A stretch of DNA of 64,000 nucleotides, from positions 177,427-241,426 of IMG/VR virus record IMGVR_UViG_3300007352_000001; one strand, given 5' to 3'. The notes under the pieces were generated by a model. The model made no database searches. It saw only the letters and a program-made list of their open reading frames with translations, and was not told where the DNA came from. The translations under genes and the position numbers were made by a program. Shown in pieces: positions 2,960-31,256 of the stretch (positions are counted from its first letter, which is position 1; each line of letters opens with the position of its first letter).

Positions 2960-2988
2960 ACCGGTACAAAGGTGCGAGAACTATGCCA
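2960..2988 (-). promoter_or_regulatory. sigma54-like repeated promoter element, copy 1
   Basis: minus strand TGGCAT-AGTTC-TCGCA-CCTTTGTACCGGT-ATG. Confidence 0.75.
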
Positions 2989-3154
2989 ACGTGTACGTGT
3001 GGCCTTTGGTGGCGCTCACGTACTTGTCGGCGCCGTACCATTTGACATGGTCGATCTCACCGTCGTCCGAGACGATGGTGGACCAGTGGGCCACCGTGTC
3101 GACCTTGAAGCGTTTCCTGTCCCCGTCACGGACTAGGGTGTCACCGGGTCGCAC
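2981..3154 (-). CDS. small hypothetical protein
   Basis: GTG start after GAGGG; MRPGDTLVRDGDRKRFKV... Confidence 0.55.
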   Translation of the reverse strand: MRPGDTLVRDGDRKRFKVDTVAHWSTIVSDDGEIDHVKWYGADKYVSATKGHTYTLA

Positions 3155-3565
3155 GGCGCCCCTCAAACCACCGTGCCCACCTCGGTAGCTTGGCCTTGAT
3201 CCCGTCCAGCTGCTCATGGATTCGCGTCTCGTCACCGCGTCCGTGGTCGGCCGCGTCGTAGCAGAGCAAGCAGTAGAGCCCGAGCTGCCGCAGGACGGTG
3301 ATCTTCCGTTCCTCCCCGGCGGTGACGTCAGGCCAGAGTCGGGTGACTGCCAGACGGAGGGCGGACTTGCGGTGGTACTTGGCGAAGTTTCCTGCCGTGC
3401 CACAATGCTCGACCGCTGCCGCGTCCGGGTTGCGGAGGGTGTGTACGTGGCGCTCGAACTCCGGCCGGCACGTGGCGCACAGCAAGTCGGCTTCAGCGGC
3501 GCGCTCGCGGCAGTGATGACAGCGTTGGGCGTACGGGATCGGGTTCGGTTCGGTTCGTAGGGCAT
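3141..3565 (-). pseudogene. zinc-finger protein gene frameshifted in a (GAACC)3 repeat
   Basis: ATG at 3565 (MPYEP) is out of frame with the protein-like downstream frame (CHHC, CATC, CLLC); removing one GAACC restores MPYEPNPIPYAQRCHHC. Confidence 0.5.
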
Positions 3566-3570
3566 CACGA

Positions 3571-4005
3571 TCACCGGCGAGCGCAGGACGGCGCAGCGGC
3601 CTTGAGGCCGGCGCGATCGAGCGCCTCGTCCACTGCTTCCTTGCGACTGCGGCAGAAGGTTGAGGACATCTTGTCGCCGATGGTGGCGGTCCAGTACCCG
3701 CCCCGTCGGCGCCAGACTGCGCCGACGTCCCCACCGTCCGAGAGGATCCGATAGCTGCTCGGGCCGTCGTACTTGAACGTGATCATCGTCACCTTGCCGA
3801 GGGTCAGCACCACGCGATCGCCCGGCTTCGACAGCCGCAGCGCGCGGCGCATCATCGCCAACGCACTCTTCGCCGCCGGGGCCATGCTCAGGTGAGTCTC
3901 TTCGAGCGTGAGCGGGTTGCGTAGGAAGTAGTGCCCGTTCTCGTGCCGGCCCAGCGTCAGGCCGTGCGAGAGTGCGAAGGCGACCGCGGTCTTGTGCATC
4001 TGCAT
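3571..4005 (-). CDS. hypothetical protein
   Basis: 144 aa ORF in minus-strand block. Confidence 0.65.
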   Translation of the reverse strand: MQMHKTAVAFALSHGLTLGRHENGHYFLRNPLTLEETHLSMAPAAKSALAMMRRALRLSKPGDRVVLTLGKVTMITFKYDGPSSYRILSDGGDVGAVWRRRGGYWTATIGDKMSSTFCRSRKEAVDEALDRAGLKAAAPSCARR

Positions 4006-4017
4006 GGTGAGTGCCCT

Positions 4018-4860
4018 TCACTTCGCCTTGCGCTGGATCTTCGGCCAGCGGGTCTTGTCGCGCGCGATCGCCTTCTCGTCGTCGACGTTGGACGCATGCT
4101 TGGTAGCCAAGGCGAGGGCGACCAGGTCGGCGCGATCGGCGTGGCTAGAGCGTATGCGCGGCGCGTCCTCACGATCGGTCTGCTCGTTCCAGTAGTCGAC
4201 GTCGCGCAGCTCGCGGGCCAGATCCTCGTACGCGGACCGCTCGGTGTTGTAGAGCACCCAGCCCTTGACGGGGTGAAGGACGGCCTTCGCCAGCTTCTCG
4301 GCGCGCTTGGTATCGCGCTCAGCCTTGCGGGCTTCCTTCGCTTCACGCGCCTCGCGGCCGACGCGCCCCTCGCCCCAGAACTTCGAGGCCGGCGCCGACG
4401 GGAAGCAGACGGTGCACATCGTCTCGCCGTATTCCTTGACCGCTTCCTCTTCGGTCGCGCCGGAGAGGGTGAACACCCATGAATACTGCGTGGTCGGGAA
4501 GCAGGTCGAGCAGCCGCGCGTGCTGTGGACGTGGCCGTTGCCGTTGGTGACCAGGTAGAAGCGTGACCAGGGGCGCCGCGCGTATTCCTCGTGCAGCGGC
4601 GCCGCCGCGGCGCGGGCGGCATCGCGCTTGCGCGTGTACGCGGCGACCTCGGCTTCCGCCTCATCGAGTCCATGGAACCGGAAGTCCGGGCCGTACCTGT
4701 CGGGATGCCGCTCGTGCAGTAGCTTCGAGTCCTCCAGCAGGCGCTCGACACGGTTGGTCAGGTAGGACAGCCGGAAGATCGCGTCGTACTCGATCCCCAC
4801 CAGGCGGGCCAACTCGGTGTCGATCTCGACCGGCGTCTGCGTGCTGAGTGGCTTCGACAT
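4018..4860 (-). CDS. hypothetical protein with HxxxxCxxC...CxxC zinc motif
   Basis: HVHSTRGCSTC and CTVCFP; ATG at 4860 abuts promoter element. Confidence 0.75.
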   Translation of the reverse strand: MSKPLSTQTPVEIDTELARLVGIEYDAIFRLSYLTNRVERLLEDSKLLHERHPDRYGPDFRFHGLDEAEAEVAAYTRKRDAARAAAAPLHEEYARRPWSRFYLVTNGNGHVHSTRGCSTCFPTTQYSWVFTLSGATEEEAVKEYGETMCTVCFPSAPASKFWGEGRVGREAREAKEARKAERDTKRAEKLAKAVLHPVKGWVLYNTERSAYEDLARELRDVDYWNEQTDREDAPRIRSSHADRADLVALALATKHASNVDDEKAIARDKTRWPKIQRKAK

Positions 4861-4889
4861 ACCGGTACAAAGGTGCGAAGAGCGTGCCA
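4861..4889 (-). promoter_or_regulatory. sigma54-like repeated promoter element, copy 2
   Basis: TGGCAC-GCTCT-TCGCA-CCTTTGTACCGGT-ATG. Confidence 0.75.
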
Positions 4890-4890
4890 A

Positions 4891-5520
4891 TCAGTCCCCC
4901 AGGAACCTGTTGCGATTGTCCATGGGGATGAGGGCGCCGTGCCCAGCGTCGACGATTGCTTGGTAGAGTCGCCTAGCACCTGCTTTGAGGTGTGCGACTT
5001 GTACCGGGTCGATGTGGGCGAGCCAGTGAACCTGGTCGACGGTGTAGCTGGCTGGATGACTCGCCGGCAGCTGCAGGACGTCGTTCAGTACCTTGCGTAG
5101 ATCGTGCGCGACCTTCAGCGGCTTCCTTGGGTCGTCAGGCTTCGCCACTGGCGGCTTGAGCCCTTGGCGGAAGAGTGCCTGGCGAAGTGCGTTGCCGCCG
5201 AAGTCGTAGTGATCCGACCGGCCGACGTAGATGTACGGCGCCGCACTCTCGAACACCCAGCGTGTCGGGTCATAGACGCGACCGTCTGGAAGGTCGATCC
5301 AGCCGTGGTTCGAGAACGGCCGGCCCGTGAAGATGTTCCCTTCGGCGATCGGGCCGTGCCAGATGCCGTACGAGAGCTGTGAACGTGCCGGCAGAAGCTC
5401 AGAACGAAAGACCTGTGACGCAACCTGGTAGCAGTGACCAGGCCATCCTTCGACCGGCCAGTTGATCAGGGCGGCAACGGTCCGCACGTCGAGTGCGCGT
5501 TTGCTGAGACGAGTCGGCAT
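4891..5520 (-). CDS. putative transglutaminase/papain-fold (Cys-His-Asp) protein
   Basis: GHCY...NHGWI....G.VYDPT pattern. Confidence 0.55.
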   Translation of the reverse strand: MPTRLSKRALDVRTVAALINWPVEGWPGHCYQVASQVFRSELLPARSQLSYGIWHGPIAEGNIFTGRPFSNHGWIDLPDGRVYDPTRWVFESAAPYIYVGRSDHYDFGGNALRQALFRQGLKPPVAKPDDPRKPLKVAHDLRKVLNDVLQLPASHPASYTVDQVHWLAHIDPVQVAHLKAGARRLYQAIVDAGHGALIPMDNRNRFLGD

Positions 5521-5551
5521 CTATCGGGACAAAGGTGCGAGAGGTATGCCA
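5521..5551 (-). promoter_or_regulatory. sigma54-like repeated promoter element, copy 3 (divergent pair with copy 4)
   Basis: TGGCAT-ACCTC-TCGCA-CCTTTGTCCCGAT-AG-ATG. Confidence 0.72.
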
Positions 5552-5578
5552 CCGATCGCGTCGATCTGCTAGAGGAGT

Positions 5579-5607
5579 TGGCACAATCCCTGCACTTTTG
5601 TCCCGGT
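5579..5607 (+). promoter_or_regulatory. sigma54-like repeated promoter element, copy 4
   Basis: TGGCAC-AATCC-CTGCA-CTTTTGTCCCGGT-ATG. Confidence 0.72.
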
Positions 5608-5775
5608 ATGGATGCATTGACCGCTGAGTTGTTGGAGGCCGCAAAGCAGGTGTTCGAGTCGACCACTGAGTGCCGGCACGGCCACTGGTTGGTGCCGAAT
5701 GCAGCGGTGCGTCGCCTGGTCGTCGCGACTGAGGCCCTCGATCCAACCTGGCGCCCGGCCTCGGAGGAAGCGTGA
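5608..5775 (+). CDS. small hypothetical protein
   Basis: MDALTAELLEAAK...; ATG abuts promoter element. Confidence 0.6.
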   Translation: MDALTAELLEAAKQVFESTTECRHGHWLVPNAAVRRLVVATEALDPTWRPASEEA

Positions 5776-5993
5776 GCAACGTCCCCATCAAACCGTTCAA
5801 CGATCGCCAGGCGATCGCGTACGCCGACCGCATCGAGAGCGGTGGAGTCGTCGTCATCATCTGCAACCGGTGCCGCGGCGAGGTGAAGCGGCACAAGGTG
5901 AAGCCGACACTGGCGAAGCTCGTGCTGTCGCAGTGGAACCTCGACAACGGCGGTTTCCCACTCGCCGCGTGCCAGCGGTGCAAGGAGCGTTGA
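5772..5993 (+). CDS. small zinc-ribbon protein
   Basis: CNRC and CQRC; coupled. Confidence 0.6.
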   Translation: MSNVPIKPFNDRQAIAYADRIESGGVVVIICNRCRGEVKRHKVKPTLAKLVLSQWNLDNGGFPLAACQRCKER

Positions 5994-6619
5994 TGCCCAA
6001 GGTCAGAGAGACGGACATTCTGCACGAAGCCGGCGACTACTGGGTGAAGCGAGTGGCCAGAGGATTCGAGGTGTACCGAAACGGCCTGACCCACGCCGTG
6101 CGTGTCGCGAGCGTCGGCGACGGCCCCGGCCCGCGCCTTGGCATTGAGCGAGCGAAGGCCGAGGCTGATCGTCTCTATGCGACAGACTTCGTCGCCACTG
6201 CGCAGCGCATCGCCACCGAGGCCCACGCCGGCCAGACCAGAGCGTTCGGCCCCCAGGCCGGGCAGCCGTACATCATCCACCCCACCGCGGTCGCCGGCCG
6301 CTTCCAGGATGATCCTGTCAAGCAAGCGATCGGTTGGCTGCACGACACCGTCGAGGACACGGCCAAGACCGATCATCCGGTAACCTTCGACGACCTCCGT
6401 GCCGCCGGTTTGCCCGAAGAGGTCGTCACTGGCGTAGACGCAATGACGCGCCGTCAGGGCGAGGCGTACCACGACTTCGTCGTGCGCTGCTCGCGACATC
6501 CGCACGCGCGGCACGTGAAGCTCGCCGACCTCGGCGACAACATGGCCACGTTGCCCGAGGGGCACGGGCTCAGGAAGCGGTACGTCAAGGCGCTCGTGCT
6601 GCTCGCGGAGGCCGAATGA
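5993..6619 (+). CDS. HD-domain hydrolase, small alarmone hydrolase (SAH/MESH1)-like, with N-terminal extension
   Basis: AHAGQTR...PYIIHP..VA...LHDTVEDT...VKLADLGDNM, RelA/SpoT hydrolase-type motifs. Confidence 0.8.
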   Translation: MPKVRETDILHEAGDYWVKRVARGFEVYRNGLTHAVRVASVGDGPGPRLGIERAKAEADRLYATDFVATAQRIATEAHAGQTRAFGPQAGQPYIIHPTAVAGRFQDDPVKQAIGWLHDTVEDTAKTDHPVTFDDLRAAGLPEEVVTGVDAMTRRQGEAYHDFVVRCSRHPHARHVKLADLGDNMATLPEGHGLRKRYVKALVLLAEAE

Positions 6620-6765
6620 GACCGCGCAAGTGTCCACGATGCAACGGTCGACTGGCTCTGCTTGGGGCGACGGCTGGATCGCAGAAGCGTTGGTACTGCA
6701 CCACGCGCGGCGGCTGCGGCCACGTGTGGAGTCGTGTCGACGGCAAGTGGGTCGCGTTGTCATGA
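6616..6765 (+). CDS. small zinc-ribbon protein
   Basis: MRPRKCPRC...WYC....GCGHVW. Confidence 0.55.
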   Translation: MRPRKCPRCNGRLALLGATAGSQKRWYCTTRGGCGHVWSRVDGKWVALS

Positions 6766-6998
6766 CCGAGCTGCAGCGCCGTGCGCTGGCTCGCGCGATC
6801 AAGGCGTATCCCGAGTCGATCATCGCGACCGGCTCTGGTGACCGAGTGACGCTGGCGTCACTCCACACCAGAGGGTTGCTGACGCGCACTGTGCGACGCG
6901 AGGCGCGCCAGGAAGCGGACCGGGCGTACGCGTACAAGGCATCCGACCTCGTCATGGAAGAGTGGCGCGCGATCTGCGCAAGAAAGGCGGCACCGTGA
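6762..6998 (+). CDS. hypothetical protein, possible winged helix
   Basis: TLASLHTRGLLTR; coupled. Confidence 0.55.
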   Translation: MTELQRRALARAIKAYPESIIATGSGDRVTLASLHTRGLLTRTVRREARQEADRAYAYKASDLVMEEWRAICARKAAP

Positions 6999-7570
6999 AG
7001 ATCACCAACACTTCACTGTATCTCACCAGGAACCTGCGACGGATCGTCGCCCGCGTCGCGGCCGAGGAGCTGACGTCCGAGCAGCGTGCCGGCATCATCT
7101 CGGTGCGCTTCGAGACGCGGAGAGGGTCACGGAAGGGGCCGTGCACGAGCGTCGCAGTCGGTCGCACCGACAACAAGACCGCGCGCTGTGCGGTCAGCCT
7201 GCCAGAGCAGAGCACGGAGCCGGAGTACGTCGCCGTCGCCCTCGCCCGCGCCTTCGCCGAAGCGAAGGGAGTGAGCCAGCGGCAGATGCAGGAAGTGAAG
7301 CGCTACGGCTTCAAGACCGGCTGGCACACCTTCTACTCGTCAGTGGTCGACATCCCGATCACGAAGCGAGCGCCGCGTATCAAGGCGCGGCCGACGTCGT
7401 TCGCCAAGCTCGTGCACGGGAAGCAGAACGCCGAGGCACGCGTGCGCGAGTGGGAGCGCAAGCAGAAGCTCGCTACGACCAAGTTGAAGGTCTGGCGCGC
7501 GAAGGTGCGTTACTACGATCGGAAACTGGAGAAGCGCAGGCCGAAAGAGGAGGCCGGTGCCACGGCCTGA
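6995..7570 (+). CDS. basic hypothetical protein
   Basis: GTG start overlapping upstream stop; C-terminal coiled coil. Confidence 0.65.
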   Translation: MKITNTSLYLTRNLRRIVARVAAEELTSEQRAGIISVRFETRRGSRKGPCTSVAVGRTDNKTARCAVSLPEQSTEPEYVAVALARAFAEAKGVSQRQMQEVKRYGFKTGWHTFYSSVVDIPITKRAPRIKARPTSFAKLVHGKQNAEARVREWERKQKLATTKLKVWRAKVRYYDRKLEKRRPKEEAGATA

Positions 7571-7664
7571 CCCACCTGCCGCCAGAGGTTAAAACAACAC
7601 CGCGCTTTTGTAACAGCACCGGGCCGGAGGCTGGCGCTGAGCATGCCGACGCGATATAGGACCG

Positions 7665-7744
7665 GGGGCTGATAGGCCCCGTGCCGGTCACCTGCCCGGT
7701 GACCTTAACCGCCCCGCACGTCCTGCCCGGACGCCGGGGCGGTT
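7665..7744 (+). repeat. cluster of three GC-rich hairpins, two with identical TGCCC loops
   Basis: GGGGCT-GATA-GGCCCC; GGTCACC-TGCCC-GGTGACC; AACCGCCCCG..CGTCC-TGCCC-GGACG..CGGGGCGGTT. Confidence 0.6.
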
Positions 7745-7749
7745 CACGT

Positions 7750-7779
7750 TTGACAACGCGACAAGATCTGGGGTATGCG
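7750..7779 (+). promoter_or_regulatory. putative sigma70-type promoter of the replication/recombination block
   Basis: TTGACA-N18-TATGCG in intergenic DNA. Confidence 0.4.
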
Positions 7780-7916
7780 ACGCATCACCTTCTAGTGGGA
7801 GACGTCTCACGACCGATGCCTTCTAGCGGGGACCGGTGGGGTGGCGCTGGGCGCTGGCCAGTAATCCTGGACGTTGACCGGCGCCGCTCCTCGGTGATGC
7901 GGTTGGATGTGGTGGG

Positions 7917-9269
7917 GTGATGACGGAGCAACGACTCTCGGCGGACCAGCAGCTAGCCGCTGATACGGTGATGACGCGACCGGGTCCGTTCTTCCTGACG
8001 GGCGCCGCAGGCACCGGCAAGAGCTATGTCATCAACCACTTGCGTCGCACCGTGCGCGGCGTCGCGGTCTGCGCGATGACTGGCATGGCCGCGCAACTGA
8101 TCCGCGGCCGGACGCTGCACTCGTACGCCTCGATCCATCCGCGTCATGGCGTCGTGCCATCGCACAAGGCCGTCGAGCGCGTGCAGGCGACGAACCTGCT
8201 CATCATCGACGAGATCTCGATGGCGGACGTGAACCTGTTCATGCAGTTGCACTCGCGCTTCGATGCCTGCGAGTGGGTGCCGAAGGTGCTGATGGTCGGT
8301 GACTTGATGCAGCTGCCGCCAGTCGAGGGCGATCAGCTGATCAACTCGCCCTGGTGGCCGGAGGTCACGACGCTCGTGCTCACCGAGCCGCACCGCCAAC
8401 ACGAGCAGCACTTCATCGACGTGCTGAACGAGATCCGCGTCGGGCACGTGACCTCGAACGTGTTGAGCTTCCTCGCCGAGCGTTACGTCGACCGGCTCCC
8501 GGAAGATTGCACGCAGCTCTACGCGCACCGGCGCTCGGTCGACGACGAGAACACCCGCCGTCTGGATGCCTTGCCGGGGCAACCAACGCGCTTCGACTGG
8601 CAGGTGTACGGCGCGGGGCACTCGCGTTTCCGCACGCGGCAGGAAGAGAAAGACTTCCTCGCGCGCTTCGTGCAGCCTGATCGCGTCCGCTTCCCGGTCG
8701 AGCTGTTCGTGAAGGAACATGCGCGCGTCGTGCTGCTCACCAACGCCGACGAGTGGCGCAACGGTTCAACTGGTGTCGTGACGCAGATCGGTGAGGACTT
8801 CCTGCGTGTGCGACTTGACTGGAATGGTCGAGAGGTATCGGTTGGCCGCACCAATGAGGAAGTGTATCACGACGACGACAAGCCCGTGGCGTACGTCCGA
8901 CAGTTGCCAGTGCGGCTTGGGTGGGCGCTCACGGTGCACAAGGCACAGGGGATGACGATCGACCGCCTGGGCGTCGATTTGAATGGTCACTTCGCGCCTG
9001 GCCAGACGTACGTGGCGCTCAGTCGCGCGGCGACGTCGAGCGGGCTCTTCGTGACGGGGAAGTTGCAACGCTTGCAGGTGAACCAGTTCGCGCGAGCGAT
9101 CGAGGAGATGTCGCGTCGCTTGCATGATGAGCGGATGGCTGCCGGCGTGGCCGGGGTTGTGGTTGATGAGGAGGATGAGGATGTCGGCTTCTTTGGAGGA
9201 AGCACGCCAGTTTCGCGCATCAGTTTCCGCTGCCGCGGTCCTCGCGTGCGACTCGACTGCGTCACCTGA
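7917..9269 (+). CDS. RecD/Pif1-like SF1B DNA helicase
   Basis: GAAGTGKS, IIDEISM, GDLMQLPPV, HRQ, WALTVHKAQGMT, GQTYVALSR. Confidence 0.92.
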   Translation: MMTEQRLSADQQLAADTVMTRPGPFFLTGAAGTGKSYVINHLRRTVRGVAVCAMTGMAAQLIRGRTLHSYASIHPRHGVVPSHKAVERVQATNLLIIDEISMADVNLFMQLHSRFDACEWVPKVLMVGDLMQLPPVEGDQLINSPWWPEVTTLVLTEPHRQHEQHFIDVLNEIRVGHVTSNVLSFLAERYVDRLPEDCTQLYAHRRSVDDENTRRLDALPGQPTRFDWQVYGAGHSRFRTRQEEKDFLARFVQPDRVRFPVELFVKEHARVVLLTNADEWRNGSTGVVTQIGEDFLRVRLDWNGREVSVGRTNEEVYHDDDKPVAYVRQLPVRLGWALTVHKAQGMTIDRLGVDLNGHFAPGQTYVALSRAATSSGLFVTGKLQRLQVNQFARAIEEMSRRLHDERMAAGVAGVVVDEEDEDVGFFGGSTPVSRISFRCRGPRVRLDCVT

Positions 9270-9597
9270 CGCGCAGATCGCCCAGGTTCTCGCCGCCGTG
9301 CTCGCGGCGGTGCCCAACGAGGTGAAGCCGCTCGGCGGCGACGTCGCCGACCACGATCTGCATCCGTTGATCGTCGCGGCCGTGAACGACTTTGCCGGGT
9401 ACTTGAGCACTCAACCGGACTTCCACGTTGGGGAGACTCGTCACCCTGAACCGCTCATCTTGCGCATGAAAGAGTGGATGGAGAAGCGCGAGCTGCGCGA
9501 CACTGCGTGGTCCGGCGATTGGTTCTCGGTGCTGCCGAAGCGCACGATTGAGCTGTACCTGCTCGTCGCGATGCTCCAGGCCCGCAAGCTCGCATGA
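9181..9597 (+). CDS. hypothetical protein
   Basis: ATG after GAGG-rich tract; stop coupled to SbcC-N start. Confidence 0.55.
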   Translation: MSASLEEARQFRASVSAAAVLACDSTASPDAQIAQVLAAVLAAVPNEVKPLGGDVADHDLHPLIVAAVNDFAGYLSTQPDFHVGETRHPEPLILRMKEWMEKRELRDTAWSGDWFSVLPKRTIELYLLVAMLQARKLA

Positions 9598-10568
9598 TCG
9601 GCTCGGTCATACTCGAAGGATTCCAGGGACACATCAGCAGTCACCTGGAGTTCAGCCCAGGCGTCAACGTCGTTGTGGGTGAAGGCGACGTCGGCAAGAC
9701 GGCGGTGATGCGCGCAGTGCGTTGGGCGTTGGAGAACCGCCCAGCGGGGGACGGCTTTGTCTACCGCGGTTCGAGGAAGAAGCTCCCTTGTCGGGTGACG
9801 ATCAAGACAGCGCGTGGCGACACCATCATCCGTGAGCGCAAGCCGAAGAACCGCTACGTGGTGAACGAGACCGAGTTCACGACTGTCGGTCGCACCGTGC
9901 CCGACGAGGTACGTGCCGTTCTCGATCTCCAACCGATCAACGTGCAAGGCCAGTTGATCGGACAGTACTTCCTCGTGCTTGACAGCCCTGGGGAGATCTC
10001 ACGCTACCTGAGTGACCTCTACCACTTCGATGCGGCGACCGTGGCGAGCCAGCAGCTGAAGGAAGGTGCCCACCGCGCGACTCGGCAACAGCAGGATCTC
10101 GTCACCAAGCAGCACCAGCTGACGCAAACGCTCACGGCGTACGAGCCGCTCAGCGAGCTGGAGGCACCGATTGAACTGGCCGAGCAGTCGATCGCGGAGG
10201 TCGAAGAGGCGAAGCAACAGCAAGTGCGCTTGCAGACCTTGCTCAATCAGTTGGACACTGCTGAGCAGGACGCGGCGGTTGCCGCGCGCCTCGCGCAGCA
10301 GGACACGTCTCGCTTGACGCAGTACGCCACCTTGCTCGACTCCACGCTCACGCGACGCACGCAACTGGCCGAGCAGCTACAGCGGTTGCAACGCAGCCGA
10401 CAACAGGCTGCGACGCAGACAACAGCCGTCGAGCAGGCGTCGCGCAACGTCACCGAGGCCGTGATGAAGTACGAAGAGATTCTACGCCGCACTGCCACGT
10501 GTCCGACGTGCCTGCGGCCGATGTCGGAAGACGTCGTCTCGCACATGGTGCACGAGGTAGCAGCGTGA
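9594..10568 (+). CDS. SbcC/Rad50-like ATPase, N-terminal half (Walker A, coiled coil, zinc hook)
   Basis: LEGFQGH..LEFSPGVNVVVGEGDVGKTAVMRA; Q-loop; coiled coil; terminal CPTC. Confidence 0.85.
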   Translation: MIGSVILEGFQGHISSHLEFSPGVNVVVGEGDVGKTAVMRAVRWALENRPAGDGFVYRGSRKKLPCRVTIKTARGDTIIRERKPKNRYVVNETEFTTVGRTVPDEVRAVLDLQPINVQGQLIGQYFLVLDSPGEISRYLSDLYHFDAATVASQQLKEGAHRATRQQQDLVTKQHQLTQTLTAYEPLSELEAPIELAEQSIAEVEEAKQQQVRLQTLLNQLDTAEQDAAVAARLAQQDTSRLTQYATLLDSTLTRRTQLAEQLQRLQRSRQQAATQTTAVEQASRNVTEAVMKYEEILRRTATCPTCLRPMSEDVVSHMVHEVAA

Positions 10569-11542
10569 AGCCCGACGGGATGTGGGACTACCTCGTCCTC
10601 ATCGGCGATCTCCATCTGCGTGCGACCGCCCCTGTCTCGCGGATCGACGACTTCGTGGAGGCGCAGGCGCAGAAGGTGCGCGCCATCGTCAACATCGTGA
10701 AGGCACGTGAGGCGATCGCGGTTTTCACTGGGGACCTCTTCGATCGGCCGGATCCGCCGTACGCGCTCGTCAACCGCTACGTGCCGATCCTCAATGAGCT
10801 GGAGAGTTGCACCAAGTACGTCGTGCCTGGCAACCATGATGTGTACGGCGGCTCGTTGGCGACGCTCGGGCGCTCAGCGCTCGGCAATCTCGTCGCCCAC
10901 CGTTCGATCAACCTGCTCGGGCCGGAGCCGATGCGCTTCCGCGGACCGAGGGGTCCAGTGGCGCTCTTCGGAACGTCGTACATGCACCCGAACTGCCCGT
11001 CTCCAGACCCCGACTGCTCGCTCAACGTCCTCGTGGCGCACGAGATGATCGTTGAGAACCAGCTGTATCGCGAACAGGAAGACTTCACCCTGGTCGATCA
11101 GATCCTCCTCGACCGGCCAGGGTGGGACATGATCGTCTGCGGGCACTACCACTACCGCTTCTTGCGCGAATCGGGGACGACGCGGATCGTGAACCCAGGC
11201 GCCGTCGTGCGTGTCAAGGCGAGCGTTGGAGACCTCGCACTGGAGCCCGCAGTGTACGGGTGGAATCTGAACACTAACGAGCTGGAGTTGATCCCGTTGC
11301 CGCATCTGCCATCGAAGCAGGTTTTCCAGCCGGTCATTGTCGACGCTGGGAAGTCGCAGGAGCCAGAGGTGCTGCAGGCGTTGATGGCGCAGTTGCAGAC
11401 GCGCAACGATCAACGTCTGAGCCTGAGTGAAGTCGCGCATCGGGTGATGGCCGAGCGTGAGACTGAGGAGCCGGTACGGGCGCGTGTCCTCGATGCGTTG
11501 GCGGACGCCGAGGCCGGCTATGGCGCGGGGAGGAAGGCGTGA
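10565..11542 (+). CDS. SbcD/Mre11-like metallophosphoesterase nuclease
   Basis: GDLH, GDLFD, GNHD, GHYH, NPGA. Confidence 0.88.
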   Translation: MKPDGMWDYLVLIGDLHLRATAPVSRIDDFVEAQAQKVRAIVNIVKAREAIAVFTGDLFDRPDPPYALVNRYVPILNELESCTKYVVPGNHDVYGGSLATLGRSALGNLVAHRSINLLGPEPMRFRGPRGPVALFGTSYMHPNCPSPDPDCSLNVLVAHEMIVENQLYREQEDFTLVDQILLDRPGWDMIVCGHYHYRFLRESGTTRIVNPGAVVRVKASVGDLALEPAVYGWNLNTNELELIPLPHLPSKQVFQPVIVDAGKSQEPEVLQALMAQLQTRNDQRLSLSEVAHRVMAERETEEPVRARVLDALADAEAGYGAGRKA

Positions 11543-11841
11543 TGGACGACATCAACACGCTGCGGGCACGTGTGGCGTCGATGCGGCAGTTGCACGCGCA
11601 GGCGCAGCAGGACGCCGCGGCGAAGACCGCGGTGGTGCACACACTCCTGGAGCAGCTGCAAACCGAGTTCGGCTGCACTAGCGTGGAAGAGGGACAGCAG
11701 CTCCTGCAGCAGCTCGATCAGAAGGCGTCGACGTTGACCACGACGCTCACGCAGCTGCTGGCGGCGGTGGAGCAACAACTGGGTGGGGTGGAACGTGCGG
11801 GAGCAAGTCACAGCGGTTCGGCGACGGTACGAGCGGCTTAG
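11539..11841 (+). CDS. small coiled-coil protein
   Basis: heptad-rich 100 aa ORF between SbcD and SbcC-C. Confidence 0.65.
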   Translation: MMDDINTLRARVASMRQLHAQAQQDAAAKTAVVHTLLEQLQTEFGCTSVEEGQQLLQQLDQKASTLTTTLTQLLAAVEQQLGGVERAGASHSGSATVRAA

Positions 11842-12415
11842 TGAACGCCAGCGGCAAGTTGCCGCGGAGTTGACCACGACCGCGGCCTCGCTCGCCGCGC
11901 TGGCCGAGCAGTCGCGCGTCGAGCAACTGGCGCACGACACGGTCACGGCGATCGACATCGTCTATCGCAAGCTCGCGCTCGATCGTGTCGAGCAGCTTGT
12001 GACCATCGGCCTGCAGGCGATCTTCGAGCACGACTACGCGTTCCGTTTCCACGTCGAGCCGAAACGTGGCCAGGCCGAGACGACGATCATCATCTCGGAC
12101 CAGGGGAAGGATCTCGACCCTACGACGGAGATGGGTGGTAGCGTCGTCGATGTCGTTTCCTTGCTGTTGCGTGTCGTGCTGTGGACGCAGATGCACGAGC
12201 GCTCGGCGCCGCTTTTCTTGCTTGACGAGCCTGCCCGCATGGTGTCGGCGCAGTACCGGCCTGCCTTGGCAGCGTTCCTCCAGCGCCTCTCGAAGGAGCT
12301 GCAGGTGCAGTTCTTCATCGTGACCCACGAGCCAGCCATCGCGTCGTCGGCGGACCGCGTCTTCGAGGTCACGAAGGACGGCCAAGGGGTAAGTCATGTG
12401 GGGATTCTGCGGTGA
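11783..12415 (+). CDS. SbcC/Rad50-like ATPase, C-terminal half
   Basis: degenerate signature MGGSVVDVVSLLLR; Walker B LFLLDEP; H-loop IVTHE. Confidence 0.85.
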   Translation: MGWNVREQVTAVRRRYERLSERQRQVAAELTTTAASLAALAEQSRVEQLAHDTVTAIDIVYRKLALDRVEQLVTIGLQAIFEHDYAFRFHVEPKRGQAETTIIISDQGKDLDPTTEMGGSVVDVVSLLLRVVLWTQMHERSAPLFLLDEPARMVSAQYRPALAAFLQRLSKELQVQFFIVTHEPAIASSADRVFEVTKDGQGVSHVGILR

Positions 12416-12451
12416 AGTGTGGTACATACGGCATGGCGGTTGGGGTGGCGG

Positions 12452-13707: not shown

Positions 13708-13715
13708 GGGAGATC

Positions 13716-13982
13716 ATGGGGGACAAGACACGAGGGTTGTACGGCAAGTTCTACGTCGCGCGCGTGGACGAGTCCGACATGCCTGGTGGAAAGCACCAAG
13801 GATGCGACTACTTCGTGCTCGACCTCTCTCACGACCCGTACGCTGGTCCGGCGATCCAGGCGTACATCGACGCGTGCAAAGACGAGTACCCACTGCTCGC
13901 CGAGGATCTCCGCAAGAAGCACCTCGGTGAAAAACGTCCGGCGCAGGGAGTCGCCACGGACGCCGAACCGGAGGACGCATGA
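13716..13982 (+). CDS. conserved phage hypothetical protein
   Basis: GLYGKFYV...YFVLDL.HDPYA.PA..AY pattern; SD GGAG. Confidence 0.7.
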   Translation: MGDKTRGLYGKFYVARVDESDMPGGKHQGCDYFVLDLSHDPYAGPAIQAYIDACKDEYPLLAEDLRKKHLGEKRPAQGVATDAEPEDA

Positions 13983-17843: not shown

Positions 17844-18074
17844 ATGGATCTGGTGTTGTCCTACCTGTTCACGGGCGCGGTCGTCGGCGTCGTCCAGTGG
17901 CCGTACGTCGAGCTACTGGCCGACGAGGCGATCCGTGCCCGGAACGCTGCACCGCAGCTGCGCCGGCCACTTCTGGTCGTGACCTTCACCTTGGTCGTCA
18001 TCTTCTGGCTTCCGGCCGGCCTTTGGTACGTCTACCGGCGCGTTGGCACGCTCCTCGCACGTTTGCACCGGTAG
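17844..18074 (+). CDS. small membrane protein
   Basis: two hydrophobic segments. Confidence 0.55.
   Translation: MDLVLSYLFTGAVVGVVQWPYVELLADEAIRARNAAPQLRRPLLVVTFTLVVIFWLPAGLWYVYRRVGTLLARLHR
18044..18072 (+). promoter_or_regulatory. sigma54-like repeated promoter element, copy 5
   Basis: TGGCAC-GCTCC-TCGCA-CGTTTGCACCGGT, followed by an SD-containing leader to ATG 18109. Confidence 0.7.
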
Positions 18075-19781: not shown

Positions 19782-19783
19782 TC

Positions 19784-19812
19784 TGGCACAGATCTCGCAC
19801 CTTTGTCCCGGT
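19784..19812 (+). promoter_or_regulatory. sigma54-like repeated promoter element, copy 6
   Basis: TGGCAC-AGATC-TCGCA-CCTTTGTCCCGGT-ATG of ardC. Confidence 0.78.
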
Positions 19813-21076: not shown

Positions 21077-21357
21077 AGCGCCCGCTCGCGACGCGGACAC
21101 GCCGCCCGCCGTTGGCCGGCCCGTTCGCCGTGCTCATCGTCCCCGAAGAGAAGTTCATCCTGACTCAGGATGTGGTCCCGCCGGTGCCAGTGCATCCGCG
21201 CTCGCACCGGCTCACGCAGCTGCCAGTGGTGGCGTCGCTCACGAGCGAGCAGGCTGCGCTGTGCGTCTGGGCGTTCCCCAAAGGTGGACTCGCCGACGTC
21301 GCTAAGCGATTGCGTCAGCTCGCTGCGGTGCTCGAAGGTACTCAGGAGCTGCTCTAG
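21073..21357 (+). CDS. hypothetical protein
   Basis: ATGA coupling. Confidence 0.55.
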   Translation: MKRPLATRTRRPPLAGPFAVLIVPEEKFILTQDVVPPVPVHPRSHRLTQLPVVASLTSEQAALCVWAFPKGGLADVAKRLRQLAAVLEGTQELL

Positions 21358-21386
21358 GCACGGCATTCGCATGTCTGTGCCGATAG
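21356..21386 (+). promoter_or_regulatory. sigma54-like repeated promoter element, degenerate copy 7
   Basis: AGGCAC-GGCAT-TCGCA-TGTCTGTGCCGAT-AG. Confidence 0.55.
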
Positions 21387-21408: not shown

Positions 21409-21597
21409 ATGGACTCAGAGTGGATCGGAATCCGGCATTTGCTGGGAGGTACGTTCTCGCCATTGTGCGGAGACTTCCCAGGTTTCATCACAGGCAAAGT
21501 CGCCAACTGCAACTGCCCGACGTGCCTCTCGTTGTGGGATGCACGGGGCGGCGCCAGGCACTTGACGGCCGATGACGTCGAGATTGTGGGTCACTAG
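21409..21597 (+). CDS. small zinc-binding hypothetical protein
   Basis: H...LCG...CNCPTC. Confidence 0.5.
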   Translation: MDSEWIGIRHLLGGTFSPLCGDFPGFITGKVANCNCPTCLSLWDARGGARHLTADDVEIVGH

Positions 21598-21606: not shown

Positions 21607-22149
21607 ATGACCAAGATCGGACGAGGGTTGATCACGGCACTCGCAGTGATCGCGTTGCTCTGCGCGGTGGAGTCGGCGCAGGCGCAGCGTCACGGACGGA
21701 ACGGCAACCAGACGTTCACGTTCAACCAGAACTACAGCTACGGGCCGAACAACAACGGCCGCGACCTCGGCTACGCGAATCTCGGGCTCACCGCGTTCCT
21801 CGCGCTCCTCGACTCCGGCACCGGCGTTCGCCAGAACGGCGTGCCGGCGCCTGGCTACGACACCTACCCCGGTGGTGGTGTCGGCGGGGCCTGGGCCGGT
21901 GGTGTGGTCGTCGGCGGGGCACCCGTCGTCGTGACCGGTGTCGGACCGGTTGTGGTCTGTGACAACCCGAGCTGGTGCACGTGGCCGTCGCCGCTCGGAC
22001 CTGGTCCGGGCTCCAACGGCTTCGCGGCCGGCGTGCGGGCCGGTCAGCAGATCGCGCGTGAGCGGCGCATCGCCGGCTCGGTCGCCTACCACCAGAACTA
22101 CGCGGCCGGCTTGGAGCTGGGCGCGGCCGGGGGTGCGTACGCGCCGTGA
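21607..22149 (+). CDS. Gly-rich secreted protein
   Basis: AGGAGG SD; signal peptide ending AQA; GV-rich. Confidence 0.7.
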   Translation: MTKIGRGLITALAVIALLCAVESAQAQRHGRNGNQTFTFNQNYSYGPNNNGRDLGYANLGLTAFLALLDSGTGVRQNGVPAPGYDTYPGGGVGGAWAGGVVVGGAPVVVTGVGPVVVCDNPSWCTWPSPLGPGPGSNGFAAGVRAGQQIARERRIAGSVAYHQNYAAGLELGAAGGAYAP

Positions 22150-27168: not shown

Positions 27169-27197
27169 TGGCACGGTCCTCGCACCTTTGGCCCGGT
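27169..27197 (+). promoter_or_regulatory. sigma54-like repeated promoter element, copy 8
   Basis: TGGCAC-GGTCC-TCGCA-CCTTTGGCCCGGT-ATG. Confidence 0.75.
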
Positions 27198-27207
27198 ATG
27201 ACTGGGA

Positions 27208-27474
27208 GTGCAAGTGTTTGAACTGGGAGACCAGGTGGTCGTCGTCGGGCCGGGCTCGAATCCGTGGGTTGGTCGCACTGGGACCGTTGTCCAGGTCCTC
27301 GGCGACGACGGGCCGTTCCCGTATGTTGTGAGCGTCGACGACACGCAGATCGTCGCGCAGGTGGCTGATCTGCAGCTGCATGCGCGGCCGTTGCCGGCGC
27401 TCGATCCGGACGACGATCTCCCGTGGGACCGTTGGCAAGCTGAGTGGGAGGCGCAATGCCGCGTAAGAACGTGA
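27208..27474 (+). CDS. small SH3/KOW-like beta-barrel protein
   Basis: FELGDQVVV..G....GRTGTVVQV pattern. Confidence 0.55.
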   Translation: MQVFELGDQVVVVGPGSNPWVGRTGTVVQVLGDDGPFPYVVSVDDTQIVAQVADLQLHARPLPALDPDDDLPWDRWQAEWEAQCRVRT

Positions 27475-28737: not shown

Positions 28738-29412
28738 ATGACACTGCAGGAGCGGGTGTTCAGGTTCATTGACTCGACGGCACTGCACGGCGCCACCGAC
28801 GACGAGATCGCGGCAGCATTGAAGCGCCAGCCTCAGAAGGCGAGCGCGAAGCGACAGGCGTTGTGGGTTCTCAACCAGCTGACGCAGGACGGGCGCACAC
28901 GTACTTCACGGACTGGGCAGCAGGAAACCGTCTGGGTAACGAAAGATGCGGTGCGCCGAGCATACGGACTGGCACCGCTGGTTCCGCTGCAGGGTACCTC
29001 TCGGCGCACTGATCTCGCCTCACGCCTCTCGTACGCCGCGGTCAAACCGACCTTGGCGAAGAGACACATGAGTACGCTCATGGCGCTCGCCGAGTACATC
29101 GCGGCGACGGGATCGAAGCCGACGGGATATGAGCTGCTTGAATATATCAAGGCACGCAGTGGTGCGCCGCTGCTGCTGGATGTGAACAGCGTGCGGCCGA
29201 ATCTCACCGGATTGAAGGATAGAGGGCTCGTCAAGAAGGTCGGGCCGCTTCGCCATTGCACGAAGTCTCCGACAGGCAAGCGAGCGAACGAGTGGCAGTT
29301 GACGGACAGTGGGCGCGCGATGCTGCAGAACGTCGCGCAAACGGATGAACCGGTTGTGGTTGAGGAGGTGGGGCATGCAGTTGGTGGAACCAAGGGTGCA
29401 TCTGATCGGTAA
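28738..29412 (+). CDS. putative DNA-binding protein with two winged-helix domains
   Basis: GATDDEIAAAL...; TDLASRLS..; TGYEL...SVRPNLTGL..RGLV. Confidence 0.6.
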   Translation: MTLQERVFRFIDSTALHGATDDEIAAALKRQPQKASAKRQALWVLNQLTQDGRTRTSRTGQQETVWVTKDAVRRAYGLAPLVPLQGTSRRTDLASRLSYAAVKPTLAKRHMSTLMALAEYIAATGSKPTGYELLEYIKARSGAPLLLDVNSVRPNLTGLKDRGLVKKVGPLRHCTKSPTGKRANEWQLTDSGRAMLQNVAQTDEPVVVEEVGHAVGGTKGASDR

Positions 29413-30172
29413 GCCGCAGTTGCAATGGGACGCAGTCAACAACTACCTGCACGACATTGGGGGTGAGGCGTGGTTCGATCGCATCGAACCGTTGTACCAG
29501 GCTGGCGACATCACCGACGCCGAGGCGATGGTCGAGTTCGCTGGTCGGCTCTGTTACCGCGCGTGGGCACCGGGCTTGAACGCGAACGTGACCAAGGTGC
29601 GCGAGGACAGCGGCGTGTACCTGCGCAACATCCTGCAGCAACGCCACGGCTCGGTGCTGGAGCACGCATACTGGATCTTCATCTTCCAAGACGTCAGCCG
29701 GGTCTGGACGCACGAGTGGGTGCGCCACCGCATGGGCGTCTCGATCAGCCAGGAGTCGCTGCGCTACGTGCGGCTCGACAAGCTGAAGATGTGGATCCCA
29801 CCATGGGCGCAGCAGGATCTGGAGTTCTTCAACCGCGCCGTCGCACTCGTCGAGGACATGGAGGCTTTCCAGGTCTGGATGGCCGAGCACTTCAACCTCG
29901 ATCGCGAGGGCATGCCCTTCGACGAGAAGAAGGCCAAGACGTCGTTCATGCGCCGCTTCGCGCCAGAGGGATTGGCGACGTCGATGGTGTGGGGCGGCAA
30001 CACGCGAGCGGTGCGCCACGTGCTGGAGATGCGCAGCGACACCGCGGCCGAGGAAGAGATGCGCCTTGTCACCGCGCAACTCGGACACATCATGCAGGAC
30101 GAAGCACCCAAGCTCTTCGGCGATTACGTCGTCGAGGACAATCACTTCAAGACGGAGTTCCGGAAGGTCTGA
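29375..30172 (+). CDS. thyX: FAD-dependent thymidylate synthase
   Basis: EFAGRLCY, HGSVLEH, SR..THE.VRHR..SISQESLRY (RHRx7S). Confidence 0.95.
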   Translation: MQLVEPRVHLIGKPQLQWDAVNNYLHDIGGEAWFDRIEPLYQAGDITDAEAMVEFAGRLCYRAWAPGLNANVTKVREDSGVYLRNILQQRHGSVLEHAYWIFIFQDVSRVWTHEWVRHRMGVSISQESLRYVRLDKLKMWIPPWAQQDLEFFNRAVALVEDMEAFQVWMAEHFNLDREGMPFDEKKAKTSFMRRFAPEGLATSMVWGGNTRAVRHVLEMRSDTAAEEEMRLVTAQLGHIMQDEAPKLFGDYVVEDNHFKTEFRKV

Positions 30173-30187
30173 CCACAGGAGGACGGT

Positions 30188-31225
30188 ATGCCTGACACGG
30201 AAGCGATGGAGGCGGTCAACGGCGTGAAGGAAGTGCCTATCACGATCGAGGACGCGCAGGAGTGGGTGAGAACGTCCGACGACCTCGGGCTGGTTGGCAT
30301 GGCCGGCCCGCCGCGGCCGTTCGTTCATCTCTTCTTCACCGTGTTGGAGTACCGGCACTTCCCACCTGACAATCGCGTGCTCAACGACGAGTTCAAGCTC
30401 GCCTCGATCAAGTGGGGCGACGTCGTGTGGATGTTCGTCCGCGTGCCGGCGTCGTACCGGCCGCAGGTCGAGGCGGTCGCTGCCGAGATGGGGCTGCGCC
30501 TCGGCGATGGGTTGCCCACGATGCTCGGCGGGCCAGACGGCCCGCAACGGTTCCCGATCGACGGCGACAACGTGTACACGTTGGAGAACGTCGGCGGTTC
30601 ACAGGTCTACCAGTGGACACCGCAGGAACGCGACCTGGCGCTCAAGGACGAGCTGGCGCGCATCCAGCGCATCGTCGACACCAAGCGGGTCTCTCCCGAC
30701 GACGTCAAGGCGAGCTTGGCGCCGGTCGATGGACGGGTCGGCCACGCGAGTCATCCAGACACCAAGCGCAAGCCGCCACCCGCGGCCGAGCTGCTCGTGC
30801 GGCTGCGTGCGAATCCAAACGAGCGTATTCGGCTCGGCACCATCGGCCAGTTCGAGGCCGAAGATCTGATGGTGCTCGCTGGCGCGTTGGCGCCCGAGTT
30901 CACCGTCGTGTTCGACAAGGACCAGGAGATCTACGCCGGCAAGATGCCGGTGCGGATCTCCATGAGTCCTGGCGCCCGCCAGCTGATCGCCCGCTACCCA
31001 AACCGCGAGCAGGCGATTCTGCACTACGTCACGGCTGCATTCTCGGCCTTCGACAAGGACGCCGTCGAGGCTGGTGGCTACGTCAAGGCGCTCGAAGATT
31101 CGCCCAACGACGTGCGGTTGATGTGCGTCTTCACGCCTGGCGACGGAGTCTTGGCCGAGGCTGAGATCATCAGCGTCGAGGAGTTTGAGCGCACACACGG
31201 CGCCGACCAGGGCCAGGGCAGCTAG
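30188..31225 (+). CDS. hypothetical protein
   Basis: AGGAGG SD; 345 aa. Confidence 0.75.
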   Translation: MPDTEAMEAVNGVKEVPITIEDAQEWVRTSDDLGLVGMAGPPRPFVHLFFTVLEYRHFPPDNRVLNDEFKLASIKWGDVVWMFVRVPASYRPQVEAVAAEMGLRLGDGLPTMLGGPDGPQRFPIDGDNVYTLENVGGSQVYQWTPQERDLALKDELARIQRIVDTKRVSPDDVKASLAPVDGRVGHASHPDTKRKPPPAAELLVRLRANPNERIRLGTIGQFEAEDLMVLAGALAPEFTVVFDKDQEIYAGKMPVRISMSPGARQLIARYPNREQAILHYVTAAFSAFDKDAVEAGGYVKALEDSPNDVRLMCVFTPGDGVLAEAEIISVEEFERTHGADQGQGS

Positions 31226-31227
31226 CT

Positions 31228-31256
31228 TGGCACAGTCCTCGCACCTTTGAGCCGGT
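31228..31256 (+). promoter_or_regulatory. sigma54-like repeated promoter element, copy 9
   Basis: TGGCAC-AGTCC-TCGCA-CCTTTGAGCCGGT-ATG. Confidence 0.75.

What the first reader, a model, noticed from the sequence alone, without database searches (positions are those of the whole stretch)
2960..31256. Phage regulon of nine sigma54-like promoters with an extended conserved core, mostly driving near-leaderless mRNAs
Seen: a 29-bp element TGGCA(C/T)-N5-(T/C)(C/T)GCA-C(C/T/G)TTTGnnCCG(G/A)T occurs at 2960-2988(-), 4861-4889(-), 5521-5551(-), 5579-5607(+), 18044-18072(+), 19784-19812(+), 27169-27197(+) and 31228-31256(+), with a degenerate copy at 21356-21386(+). Every copy points into a gene start. 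Six are followed immediately by ATG and one by AG-ATG. The copies at 18044 and 21356 lack the ATG and have SD-containing leaders. I found no copy after 31.3 kb. Known: GG-N10-GC is the sigma54 -24/-12 architecture (TGGCAC-N5-TTGC), which would put +1 about 3 nt before the ATG, and sigma54 normally needs an AAA+ enhancer-binding activator. Inference: this is a phage expression class read by host sigma54 or a phage analogue. The TCGC -12 variant and the conserved -11..+3 block may recruit a phage activator or bypass activation. Downstream units include Mom, the SAH-like hydrolase and ArdC, which suggests early, anti-defence genes.
Basis: partly seen in the sequence, partly recalled or inferred. 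Interest (0 to 1): 0.88.

Follow-up and report, generated by a model that had tools for sequence, protein, structure and literature searches.

The report
Sigma54-type promoter set in jumbo phage
A 241-kb uncultured phage drives its DNA-metabolism and anti-restriction genes from 14 near-identical 29-bp promoters whose upstream half matches the promoter type read by the bacterial sigma-54 factor, although the phage encodes no sigma-54, no activator and no polymerase of its own.

Summary
Eight exact copies and one degenerate copy of a 29-bp element lie at the stated coordinates (0.2-0.4 expected by chance). The window is part of a complete, circular jumbo phage of about 241 kb from deep-subsurface water. 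The whole genome holds 14 strong copies and 1 degenerate copy, all outside the structural genes.

Every copy points into a gene start. Nine are followed within 0-2 nt by ATG and five by a Shine-Dalgarno leader. One back-to-back pair fills an entire 87-bp divergent intergenic region, so the elements must be promoters.

The upstream half is a consensus sigma54 -24/-12 sequence, 14 of 15 bases identical to E. coli glnAp2 and including its TCGC. The downstream half (CAC-N-TTTG-NN-CCGRT) is equally conserved, is never separated from the core, and also survives in a second, diverged phage lineage.

I found no phage RNA polymerase, sigma factor, sigma54 or AAA+ activator, and no shared upstream enhancer. 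The host phylum could not be resolved, and some candidate phyla lack sigma54.

Best reading (about 0.5): an early/middle promoter class read by host sigma54 holoenzyme with an unconventional activation step. Main rival (about 0.3): an unrecognised phage specificity factor.

The parts
2960..2988 (-). 29-bp promoter element, followed directly by the ATG of a 66-aa ORF (2759-2959); the unit continues into Mom (1965-2786) and an XRE-type HTH gene
   Evidence: gene; Mom Pfam
4861..4889 (-). 29-bp promoter element, 1 nt after the previous stop codon and followed directly by the ATG of a 280-aa protein (4018-4860; phrog_15500)
5523..5551 (-). 29-bp promoter element followed by AG-ATG of a 209-aa protein (4891-5520); left arm of a back-to-back pair
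5579..5607 (+). 29-bp promoter element (CTGCA -12 variant) followed directly by the ATG of a 55-aa ORF (5608-5775); it heads the rightward unit with HD hydrolase, PIF1 helicase, SbcCD-like genes and tubulin. With the copy at 5523-5551 it fills the 87-bp divergent intergenic region
18044..18072 (+). 29-bp promoter element with a 36-nt leader that carries GAGGGAGG before ATG 18109 (194-aa protein)
19784..19812 (+). 29-bp promoter element, 2 nt after the previous stop codon and followed directly by the ATG of ArdC (19813-20760); its core is 14/15 identical to E. coli glnAp2
21356..21384 (+). degenerate copy (AGGCAC-N5-TCGCATGTCTGTGCCGAT) with a GAAAGGA leader before ATG 21409 (62-aa ORF, then a 180-aa ORF; both have homologues behind the motif in the second lineage)
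27169..27197 (+). 29-bp promoter element directly after the previous stop codon. The following ATG opens only a 7-codon ORF (27198-27221); the real gene (DUF1918-like, ends 27474) probably starts at GTG 27208 or 27214. The unit continues to a PadR-like gene and ThyX
31228..31256 (+). 29-bp promoter element, 2 nt after the previous stop codon and followed directly by the ATG of a 57-aa CxxC...CxxC zinc-ribbon ORF (31257-31430)

Best explanation
The 29-mers are the promoters of the early/middle (DNA metabolism, modification, anti-restriction) gene class of a 241-kb T4-capsid-type jumbo phage. The phage has no polymerase of its own, so host RNA polymerase must read them. The upstream half (YTGGCAC-R-N4-TCGCA) is a consensus -24/-12 element, so the most likely reader is host sigma54 holoenzyme. 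It would sit as a closed complex and start at about G27/G28 of the element. That gives mRNAs with 2-3 nt before the AUG (functionally leaderless), or mRNAs that begin right at a Shine-Dalgarno sequence. The invariant downstream half (-10 to +3: CAC-N-TTTG-NN-CCGRT, then A) is not explained by sigma54 contacts. I infer that it serves the step a classical enhancer-bound activator normally serves, or controls that step. It could be the target of an unrecognised phage protein (activator or repressor), or a melting/initiation region tuned for an activator that works from solution. Shown here: the elements exist, are non-random, are oriented and positioned as promoters, match sigma54 promoters, and the phage lacks its own polymerase, sigma and bEBP.
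For: Non-random, discrete family: 14 sites score 37-51, one scores 18, and nothing else in 235 kb exceeds 12. All sites point into gene starts, 9 of 14 with ATG within 0-2 nt, and JGI gene calls agree. Many sites sit 0-2 nt after the preceding stop codon. The pair at 5523-5607 fills a divergent intergenic region, so transcription must start inside it. The core matches TGGCAC-N5-TTGCA at 10 of 11 positions in every copy, and is 14/15 identical to the verified glnAp2 sequence, TCGC included. The flanking Y at -27 and R at -20 also fit. The poorly conserved positions are the ones sigma54 does not read. The start site predicted from the E. coli ChIP-seq rule (19 bp from the motif centre, PMC4591121) falls at positions 27-28, just before the ATG. 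No RNA structure is present, so recognition is at the DNA level. No phage RNAP, sigma70-family protein, sigma54 or bEBP was found (Pfam tables). Precedent: phage YuA has a sigma54-like promoter (PMC10914365).
Against: The host is unknown. ThyX (58% to Actinomycetota), a 3.7-kb relative binned with a Mycobacterium MAG, and the GTG or leaderless starts hint at Actinobacteria, which lack sigma54 (PMC3162934). Sigma54 has an absolute need for a bEBP (PMC4591121), yet no bEBP is encoded and no shared upstream enhancer, k-mer, dyad or direct repeat exists within 250 bp. Sigma54 does not explain the invariant -10..+3 block, which never separates from the core. One weaker copy in the second lineage has TTCAC instead of CGCAC, so it lacks the G of the GC, but is still followed by ATG. 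Near-identical multi-copy promoters in large phages are classically read by phage-encoded factors.
Confidence: 0.5

Rival explanations
1. The 29-mers are middle promoters read by host core polymerase (or holoenzyme) redirected by an unrecognised phage-encoded specificity factor: a very divergent sigma-like protein or a MotA/AsiA-like adaptor made from the ORFan-rich early regions. That factor would contact the whole -29..+1 stretch, and the resemblance to sigma54 promoters would be convergent or coincidental.
For: The whole 29 bp is conserved, including the block sigma54 does not read, and the two halves never occur apart. There is no enhancer and no bEBP. Large regions with only ORFans and no 29-mer (window 31.7-52 kb) must be expressed from other promoters and could encode such a factor. 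There is an analogy in phiC31, with about 10 near-identical early promoters and its own sigma70-family gp12. This reading works even if the host is an actinobacterium.
Against: No sigma-like protein was detected by Pfam (faint precomputed hits included), by NCBIfam (with gp12 as positive control) or by phmmer. The geometry does not fit sigma70-family promoters: there is no A at -11 with T at -7 at a proper distance, and no -35 element 16-18 bp upstream. ECF-type or sigma28-type readings would put the start inside the ORFs. A chance 10/11 match to the sigma54 consensus with exact spacing has a probability of roughly 2e-4 (my estimate).
Confidence: 0.3
2. The element is the promoter of a phage-encoded RNA polymerase, either single-subunit T7-like or a non-canonical two-barrel enzyme, which would explain contiguous conservation up to +1.
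For: The conserved block runs right up to the start point, as in T7-type promoters. Many large ORFs have no known function.
Against: No PF00940 or RNA_pol_Rpb hit appears in any called gene of the essentially complete genome. No NADFDGD-type metal-binding motif appears in any ORF of 120 aa or more. The large unknown proteins lie in the tail/baseplate module.
Confidence: 0.07
3. The 29-mer is mainly an operator or an RNA-level signal (binding site for a phage repressor or partition protein, an RNase processing site that creates leaderless mRNAs, or a translation signal), with transcription starting elsewhere.
For: It has a fixed position next to start codons. TGGCAC and TCGCAC are direct repeats one helical turn apart, as expected for a tandemly bound protein.
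Against: The divergent pair leaves no room for any other promoter. The copy that heads the replication operon lies in a divergent intergenic region. The RNA is unstructured. Five copies sit at variable distances (12-36 nt) from their start codons but always upstream of the Shine-Dalgarno sequence.
Confidence: 0.08

Closest known systems
Sigma54 (RpoN) -24/-12 promoters, e.g. E. coli glnAp2
   Same: YTGGCAC-R-N4-T(C/T)GCA with exact spacing; 14/15 identical to glnAp2 over the core; variable positions coincide with those sigma54 does not read; expected start about 12 nt after the GC.
   Different: There is no enhancer and no bEBP in sight. An additional invariant 13-nt block runs from -10 to +3. 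There are fourteen near-identical copies in one phage. The mRNAs are essentially leaderless. The host may not have sigma54.
Sigma54-like promoter of Pseudomonas phage YuA (Ceyssens 2008, as cited in PMC10914365)
   Same: A phage promoter assigned to host sigma54.
   Different: YuA has one such promoter beside sigma70 promoters and a separate phage-specific motif. Here the sigma54-type element is the only conserved promoter class found and heads at least 14 units.
Early promoters of Streptomyces phage phiC31 with phage sigma gp12
   Same: About ten near-identical promoters of roughly 21 bp in front of early genes of a high-GC phage.
   Different: The sequence is unrelated (CCGGGTTGCCGACTCCCTTAC), and our motif is absent from phiC31. 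phiC31 encodes a sigma70-family protein; this phage encodes none that can be recognised.
T7-type phage polymerase promoters
   Same: A long, contiguous, nearly invariant element that ends at the start point.
   Different: No phage polymerase gene is present (and the Pfam tables).

Membership tests
sigma54-dependent promoter | GG at -24 and GC at -12, ten bp apart, within TGGCAC-N5-TTGCW | tested here: met
   All 14 strong copies match at 10/11 positions and are 14/15 identical to glnAp2.
sigma54-dependent promoter | An RpoN protein is available (host or phage) | tested here: inconclusive
   Phage: none (Pfam tables; no RpoN box; phmmer with E. coli RpoN). Host: unknown, with conflicting gene-by-gene affinities.
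sigma54-dependent promoter | Activation by an AAA+ enhancer-binding protein, usually bound 80-150 bp upstream | tested here: not met
   There is no Sigma54_activat hit, no GAFTGA loop and no NtrC homologue in the phage. No shared k-mer, dyad or direct repeat lies within 250 bp upstream. A host activator that works from solution is not excluded.
sigma54-dependent promoter | Transcription start 11-13 nt downstream of the GC | not testable with these tools
   There are no RNA data. The geometry fits: ATG or Shine-Dalgarno begins 15 nt after the C of GC in 12 of 14 copies.
promoter for a phage-encoded sigma70-family factor | The phage encodes a sigma70-family protein | tested here: not met
   No Sigma70_r2/r4 hit, even a faint one, appears in any called gene. 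NCBIfam on 9 ORFans (8 from the early region of the window, 1 from L047) was negative, while phiC31 gp12 scored 9e-13. phmmer with gp12 gave no hit.
promoter for a phage-encoded sigma70-family factor | -35 and -10 elements 16-18 bp apart, with the start 6-8 nt after the -10 | tested here: not met
   The conserved blocks are 5 and 2 nt apart. Any -10 assignment that keeps the start at or before the ATG leaves no conserved -35.
T7-like or multisubunit phage RNAP promoter | The phage encodes its own RNA polymerase | tested here: not met
   No RNA_pol family hit appears in about 99% of the genome, and no DFDGD-type motif.

The most novel reading that the evidence does not exclude
A jumbo phage runs its main early/middle programme through host sigma54 without any enhancer or canonical AAA+ activator. 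The invariant -10..+3 block would be the landing site of a new kind of phage protein that opens (or holds shut) the sigma54 closed complex, giving natural bEBP-independent control of sigma54 transcription coupled to leaderless mRNAs.
Probability: 0.2. Interest if true: 0.88.

Novelty: new variant of a known kind. Interest (0 to 1): 0.68.

Why it matters
Sigma54 transcription is regarded as strictly dependent on enhancer-binding ATPases and is rarely used by phages. A phage that puts 14 units, including its replication machinery, under sigma54-type promoters with no enhancer would point to a new way of activating or hijacking this holoenzyme. If instead the host lacks sigma54, the same element defines a new phage-specific promoter class whose reader is still unknown. 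In both cases the 29-mer is a compact, portable 'stop codon - promoter - start codon' cassette that produces leaderless mRNAs. It is also a direct handle for identifying the host and the transcription programme of a deep-subsurface jumbo phage lineage with no cultured relatives.

Tried and rejected
(1) My recollection that phiC31 early promoters resemble -24/-12 sites. I fetched phiC31: the motif is not enriched there and its own early promoter is a different sequence, so it is only an analogy.
(2) RNA-level function. Five elements fold less well than shuffles.
(3) Upstream enhancer. k-mers of 7-10 nt and dyads or direct repeats with 0-14 nt spacers were not enriched over random regions of the genome.
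(4) Hidden polymerase, sigma or activator. I walked the whole genome with Pfam gene tables, plus regex, phmmer, PHROGs, NCBIfam and PDB searches. Nothing was found.
(5) ECF-type (GGCAC-N18-CCGRT), sigma28-type (CCGATA) and Bacteroidetes TAnnTTTG readings. The first two put the start inside the ORFs, which the ArdC N-terminus contradicts. The third explains only TTTG and is at odds with the strong Shine-Dalgarno usage.
(6) Host assignment. ThyX, tubulin, flotillin, ArdC, capsid, portal and DnaB each point to different phyla. The lysis region gave no spanin or holin clue.
(7) Sigma70-like promoters and intrinsic terminators in window 1-20000 are at chance level.
(8) Single matches in unrelated contigs (L002, L005/L054, L069-L076) match only the searched pattern and fit the number expected by chance.
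(9) Two contig look-ups failed, one from my wrong coordinates and one probably because the gene has a GTG start.
Full report
OBSERVATION. Extending it through CAC-N-TTTG gives the same eight sites (0.21 expected). Aligned with flanks, six copies are followed directly by ATG. The copy at 5551(-) is followed by AG-ATG. The copies at 18044 and 21356 (the degenerate one) have Shine-Dalgarno leaders. The ATG after the 27169 copy opens only seven codons, and the real DUF1918-like gene probably starts at GTG 27208 or 27214 behind GGGAG. The ATG after 31228 opens a 57-aa CxxC...CxxC ORF.

THE GENOME. A scan of IMG/VR showed that the window belongs to a 241,426-bp contig. The same sequence was assembled in two samples as circular permutations of equal length. 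Each assembly carries a terminal duplication of about 99 bp, so this is a complete circular genome of about 241.3 kb. The samples are deep-subsurface fracture fluid from SURF, South Dakota (PMC6121073). I walked the whole genome. About 99% of it was read, and Pfam annotation was read or run for its called genes.

It is a jumbo phage with T4-type portal, prohead protease, gp23 capsid, sheath and baseplate genes. Its replication module has PolA, DnaB, a DEAD helicase, ligase, gp32-like and RecA-like genes. It also encodes a TubZ/PhuZ-like tubulin, ThyX, RtcB, NAMPT, two PspA/IM30 genes with YqiJ and flotillin, Mom, ArdC, a Mor-family protein and eight tRNAs. No deposited phage is similar at the DNA level. 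The nearest cultured phages by capsid, portal and DnaB are 30-37% identical and infect Firmicutes or Bacteroidota.

GENOME-WIDE CENSUS. A weight matrix built from the strong copies finds 14 sites scoring 37-51 and the degenerate copy at 18.1. Nothing else in 235 kb exceeds 12, and shuffles give 0-1 hits. None lies in the roughly 75-kb structural region. The six copies outside the window head these units:
- a 162-aa gene (Shine-Dalgarno leader);
- a 534-aa gene (leaderless);
- a 113-aa gene (leaderless);
- a 156-aa gene (leader);
- the MoxR-VWA-ligase-helicase-PolA operon (leader);
- a 275-aa gene (leader).

So nine of 14 copies have ATG within 0-2 nt, and five have a leader that starts with or soon reaches a Shine-Dalgarno sequence. 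Thirteen of 14 have an A right after the 29-mer. Several copies begin 0-2 nt after the stop codon of the preceding gene, which gives a 'stop - 29-mer - start' cassette.

IT IS A PROMOTER. The two copies at 5523-5551(-) and 5579-5607(+) plus a 27-bp spacer fill the 87-bp region between two divergent gene starts, so both units must start inside them. The copy heading the replication operon, and the one at about 81 kb, also face divergent neighbours. As RNA the element is less structured than shuffled controls. The same 29-mer drives unrelated genes in a second lineage (see below). These points argue against a processing site or a translation signal.

WHAT KIND OF PROMOTER. The upstream half, YTGGCAC-R-N4-T(C/T)GCA, matches the sigma54 consensus at 10 of 11 core positions, with exact spacing, in every copy. 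I fetched the E. coli glnA upstream region. glnAp2 reads TGGCACAGATTTCGC and the phage copy at 19784 reads TGGCACAGATCTCGC, which is 14 of 15 identical. The weakly conserved positions (7-11) are those sigma54 does not read. With the rule used for E. coli sigma54 sites (start 19 bp from the motif centre; PMC4591121), the start falls at G27/G28. That leaves 2-3 nt before the AUG, or a Shine-Dalgarno sequence at +4.

Other readings fit worse. ECF-like (GGCAC-N18-CCGRT) or sigma28-like (CCGATA) assignments would start transcription inside the ORFs, yet ArdC aligns to its family model from residue 5. No sigma70-type -10/-35 pair can be placed on the element.

WHAT DOES NOT FIT SIGMA54.
(i) The downstream half, CAC-N-TTTG-NN-CCGRT (-10 to +3), is as invariant as the core. 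The other 17 genome matches to the core with up to 2 mismatches are at chance level (32 in total against 24-41 in shuffles), and none of them has the block. The core and the block therefore never occur apart.
(ii) Sigma54 has an absolute need for an AAA+ enhancer-binding protein (PMC4591121), but the phage encodes none. There is no Sigma54_activat hit in any gene table, no GAFTGA loop, and no hit with E. coli NtrC.
(iii) The 250 bp upstream of the 15 sites share no k-mer, dyad or direct repeat beyond what random regions give.
(iv) The host is unknown.

THE HOST. Gene-by-gene affinities conflict:
- ThyX is closest to Actinomycetota (about 58%).
- The tubulin is closest to Planctomycetota MAGs (about 53%).
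- Flotillin is closest to Proteobacteria (about 42%).
- ArdC is closest to Desulfovibrio and Hymenobacter plasmids (41-44%).
A 3.7-kb relative was binned with a Mycobacterium MAG. On the other hand, the phage has no WhiB and no similarity to the thousands of sequenced actinophages. Actinobacteria and Cyanobacteria lack sigma54, while most diderm phyla, many Firmicutes and some Chloroflexi have it (PMC3162934).

NO PHAGE POLYMERASE OR SIGMA. No gene table shows any RNA_pol, Sigma70 or Sigma54 family, even among the faint precomputed hits. No ORF of 120 aa or more has an NADFDGD-type motif or an RpoN box. phmmer with E. coli RpoN, NtrC and phiC31 gp12 finds nothing at E<=10 among 2,552 ORFs. NCBIfam finds no sigma among nine ORFans tested (eight from the early region of the window, one from L047), while it scores gp12 at 9e-13 as a positive control. 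PHROGs and PDB searches of candidate proteins were negative. The phage therefore depends on host polymerase. A very divergent specificity factor among its many ORFans cannot be excluded.

A SECOND LINEAGE. The metagenome and genome scans found the full 29-mer in ten places on high-GC contigs from samples Ga0187893/4 and on the 'Mycobacterium' contig. Two weaker copies turned up later. There the element is followed 1-4 nt later by GTG or ATG, mostly of a family of paralogous ~205-aa proteins. These have no homologue in our phage. They are sometimes followed by homologues of window genes 21409-21597 and 21607-22149. Shared proteins are 40-85% identical, yet the 29-mer is practically unchanged. 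All of it is therefore under selection, and its reader is conserved. No other IMG/VR contig has both halves together.

COMPARISON WITH KNOWN SYSTEMS. I recalled that phiC31 early promoters resemble -24/-12 sites, and tested that. phiC31 lacks this motif. It has its own promoter of about 21 bp in roughly ten copies and a sigma70-family gp12. That makes it an analogy, not a relative. A sigma54-like promoter has been reported for Pseudomonas phage YuA (PMC10914365). I found no report of a phage regulon of this kind in the searchable literature.

VERDICT. The elements are promoters of the early/middle class. The best-supported reader is host sigma54 holoenzyme (about 0.5), with an unexplained and probably novel activation or control step tied to the downstream block. 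The main rival is an unrecognised phage specificity factor (about 0.3). A phage polymerase (0.07) or a non-promoter role (0.08) is unlikely. This is a new variant of a known kind.

Noticed in passing
window 42925-47800 (+): Eight tandem paralogous genes of about 195 aa, each ending in a conserved ...LE(V/I)xY stop that overlaps the next ATG (a 32-nt repeat at 44678, 45262, 45909 and 46493). Two members had no Pfam hit.
   Followed up: partly
window 13979-15136 (+): TubZ/PhuZ-like tubulin. Its closest named homologues (about 53% identity) are FtsZ/tubulin-family proteins of Planctomycetota MAGs, one of them on a 2.96-Mb contig. Closer unnamed homologues sit on contigs of 58-180 kb that are probably related jumbo phages.
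   Followed up: partly
L090:8003-15311: The phage carries a membrane-stress-like cluster: two PspA/IM30 genes, RtcB, YqiJ (NfeD-like) and a flotillin. In E. coli, PspA controls the sigma54 activator PspF, and rtcBA is sigma54-dependent. This may be coincidence, but it is worth a look given the promoter type.
   Followed up: no
L047:7533-8181 vs L052:14142-14796: This is the only stretch with DNA-level similarity between the two phage lineages (86% over 662 nt). It covers the 3' part of a 225-aa ORFan and about 290 nt of apparently non-coding sequence next to three tRNA genes. There was no Rfam match.
   Followed up: partly
L050-L053, L059, L060, L065, L077: A family of paralogous ~205-aa proteins starting MPRHxDFxLHxRPDYGF, each with its own copy of the 29-mer, sometimes in tandem (L051, L052). 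Pfam gave no hit, and our phage has no homologue.
   Followed up: partly
window 27198-27221 (+): A seven-codon leaderless mini-ORF directly after a promoter copy overlaps the probable GTG start of the next gene. This may reflect translational coupling or regulation.
   Followed up: no
window 55893-56306 (+) and L047:8517-8975 (-): There are two tRNA clusters: Gln, Ala, Arg, Ile and Asn in the window, and Thr, Lys and Ser elsewhere.
   Followed up: no
L048:18603-18986 (-) (= L090:19871-20254): A Mor-family transcription activator gene sits just upstream of a probable terminase, an HU-like gene and the portal. It is a candidate late-gene activator, separate from the 29-mer class.
   Followed up: no
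window 48628-49021 (+): Three copies of a 40-nt repeat (CGAGCACYTGCA...GGCTACGC) occur within 400 nt. Their nature was not examined.
   Followed up: no
window 33036-33596 (-): A GNAT-type N-acetyltransferase (weak PseH/MshD-like hits) lies among the ORFans of the leftward block, which has no 29-mer.
   Followed up: no
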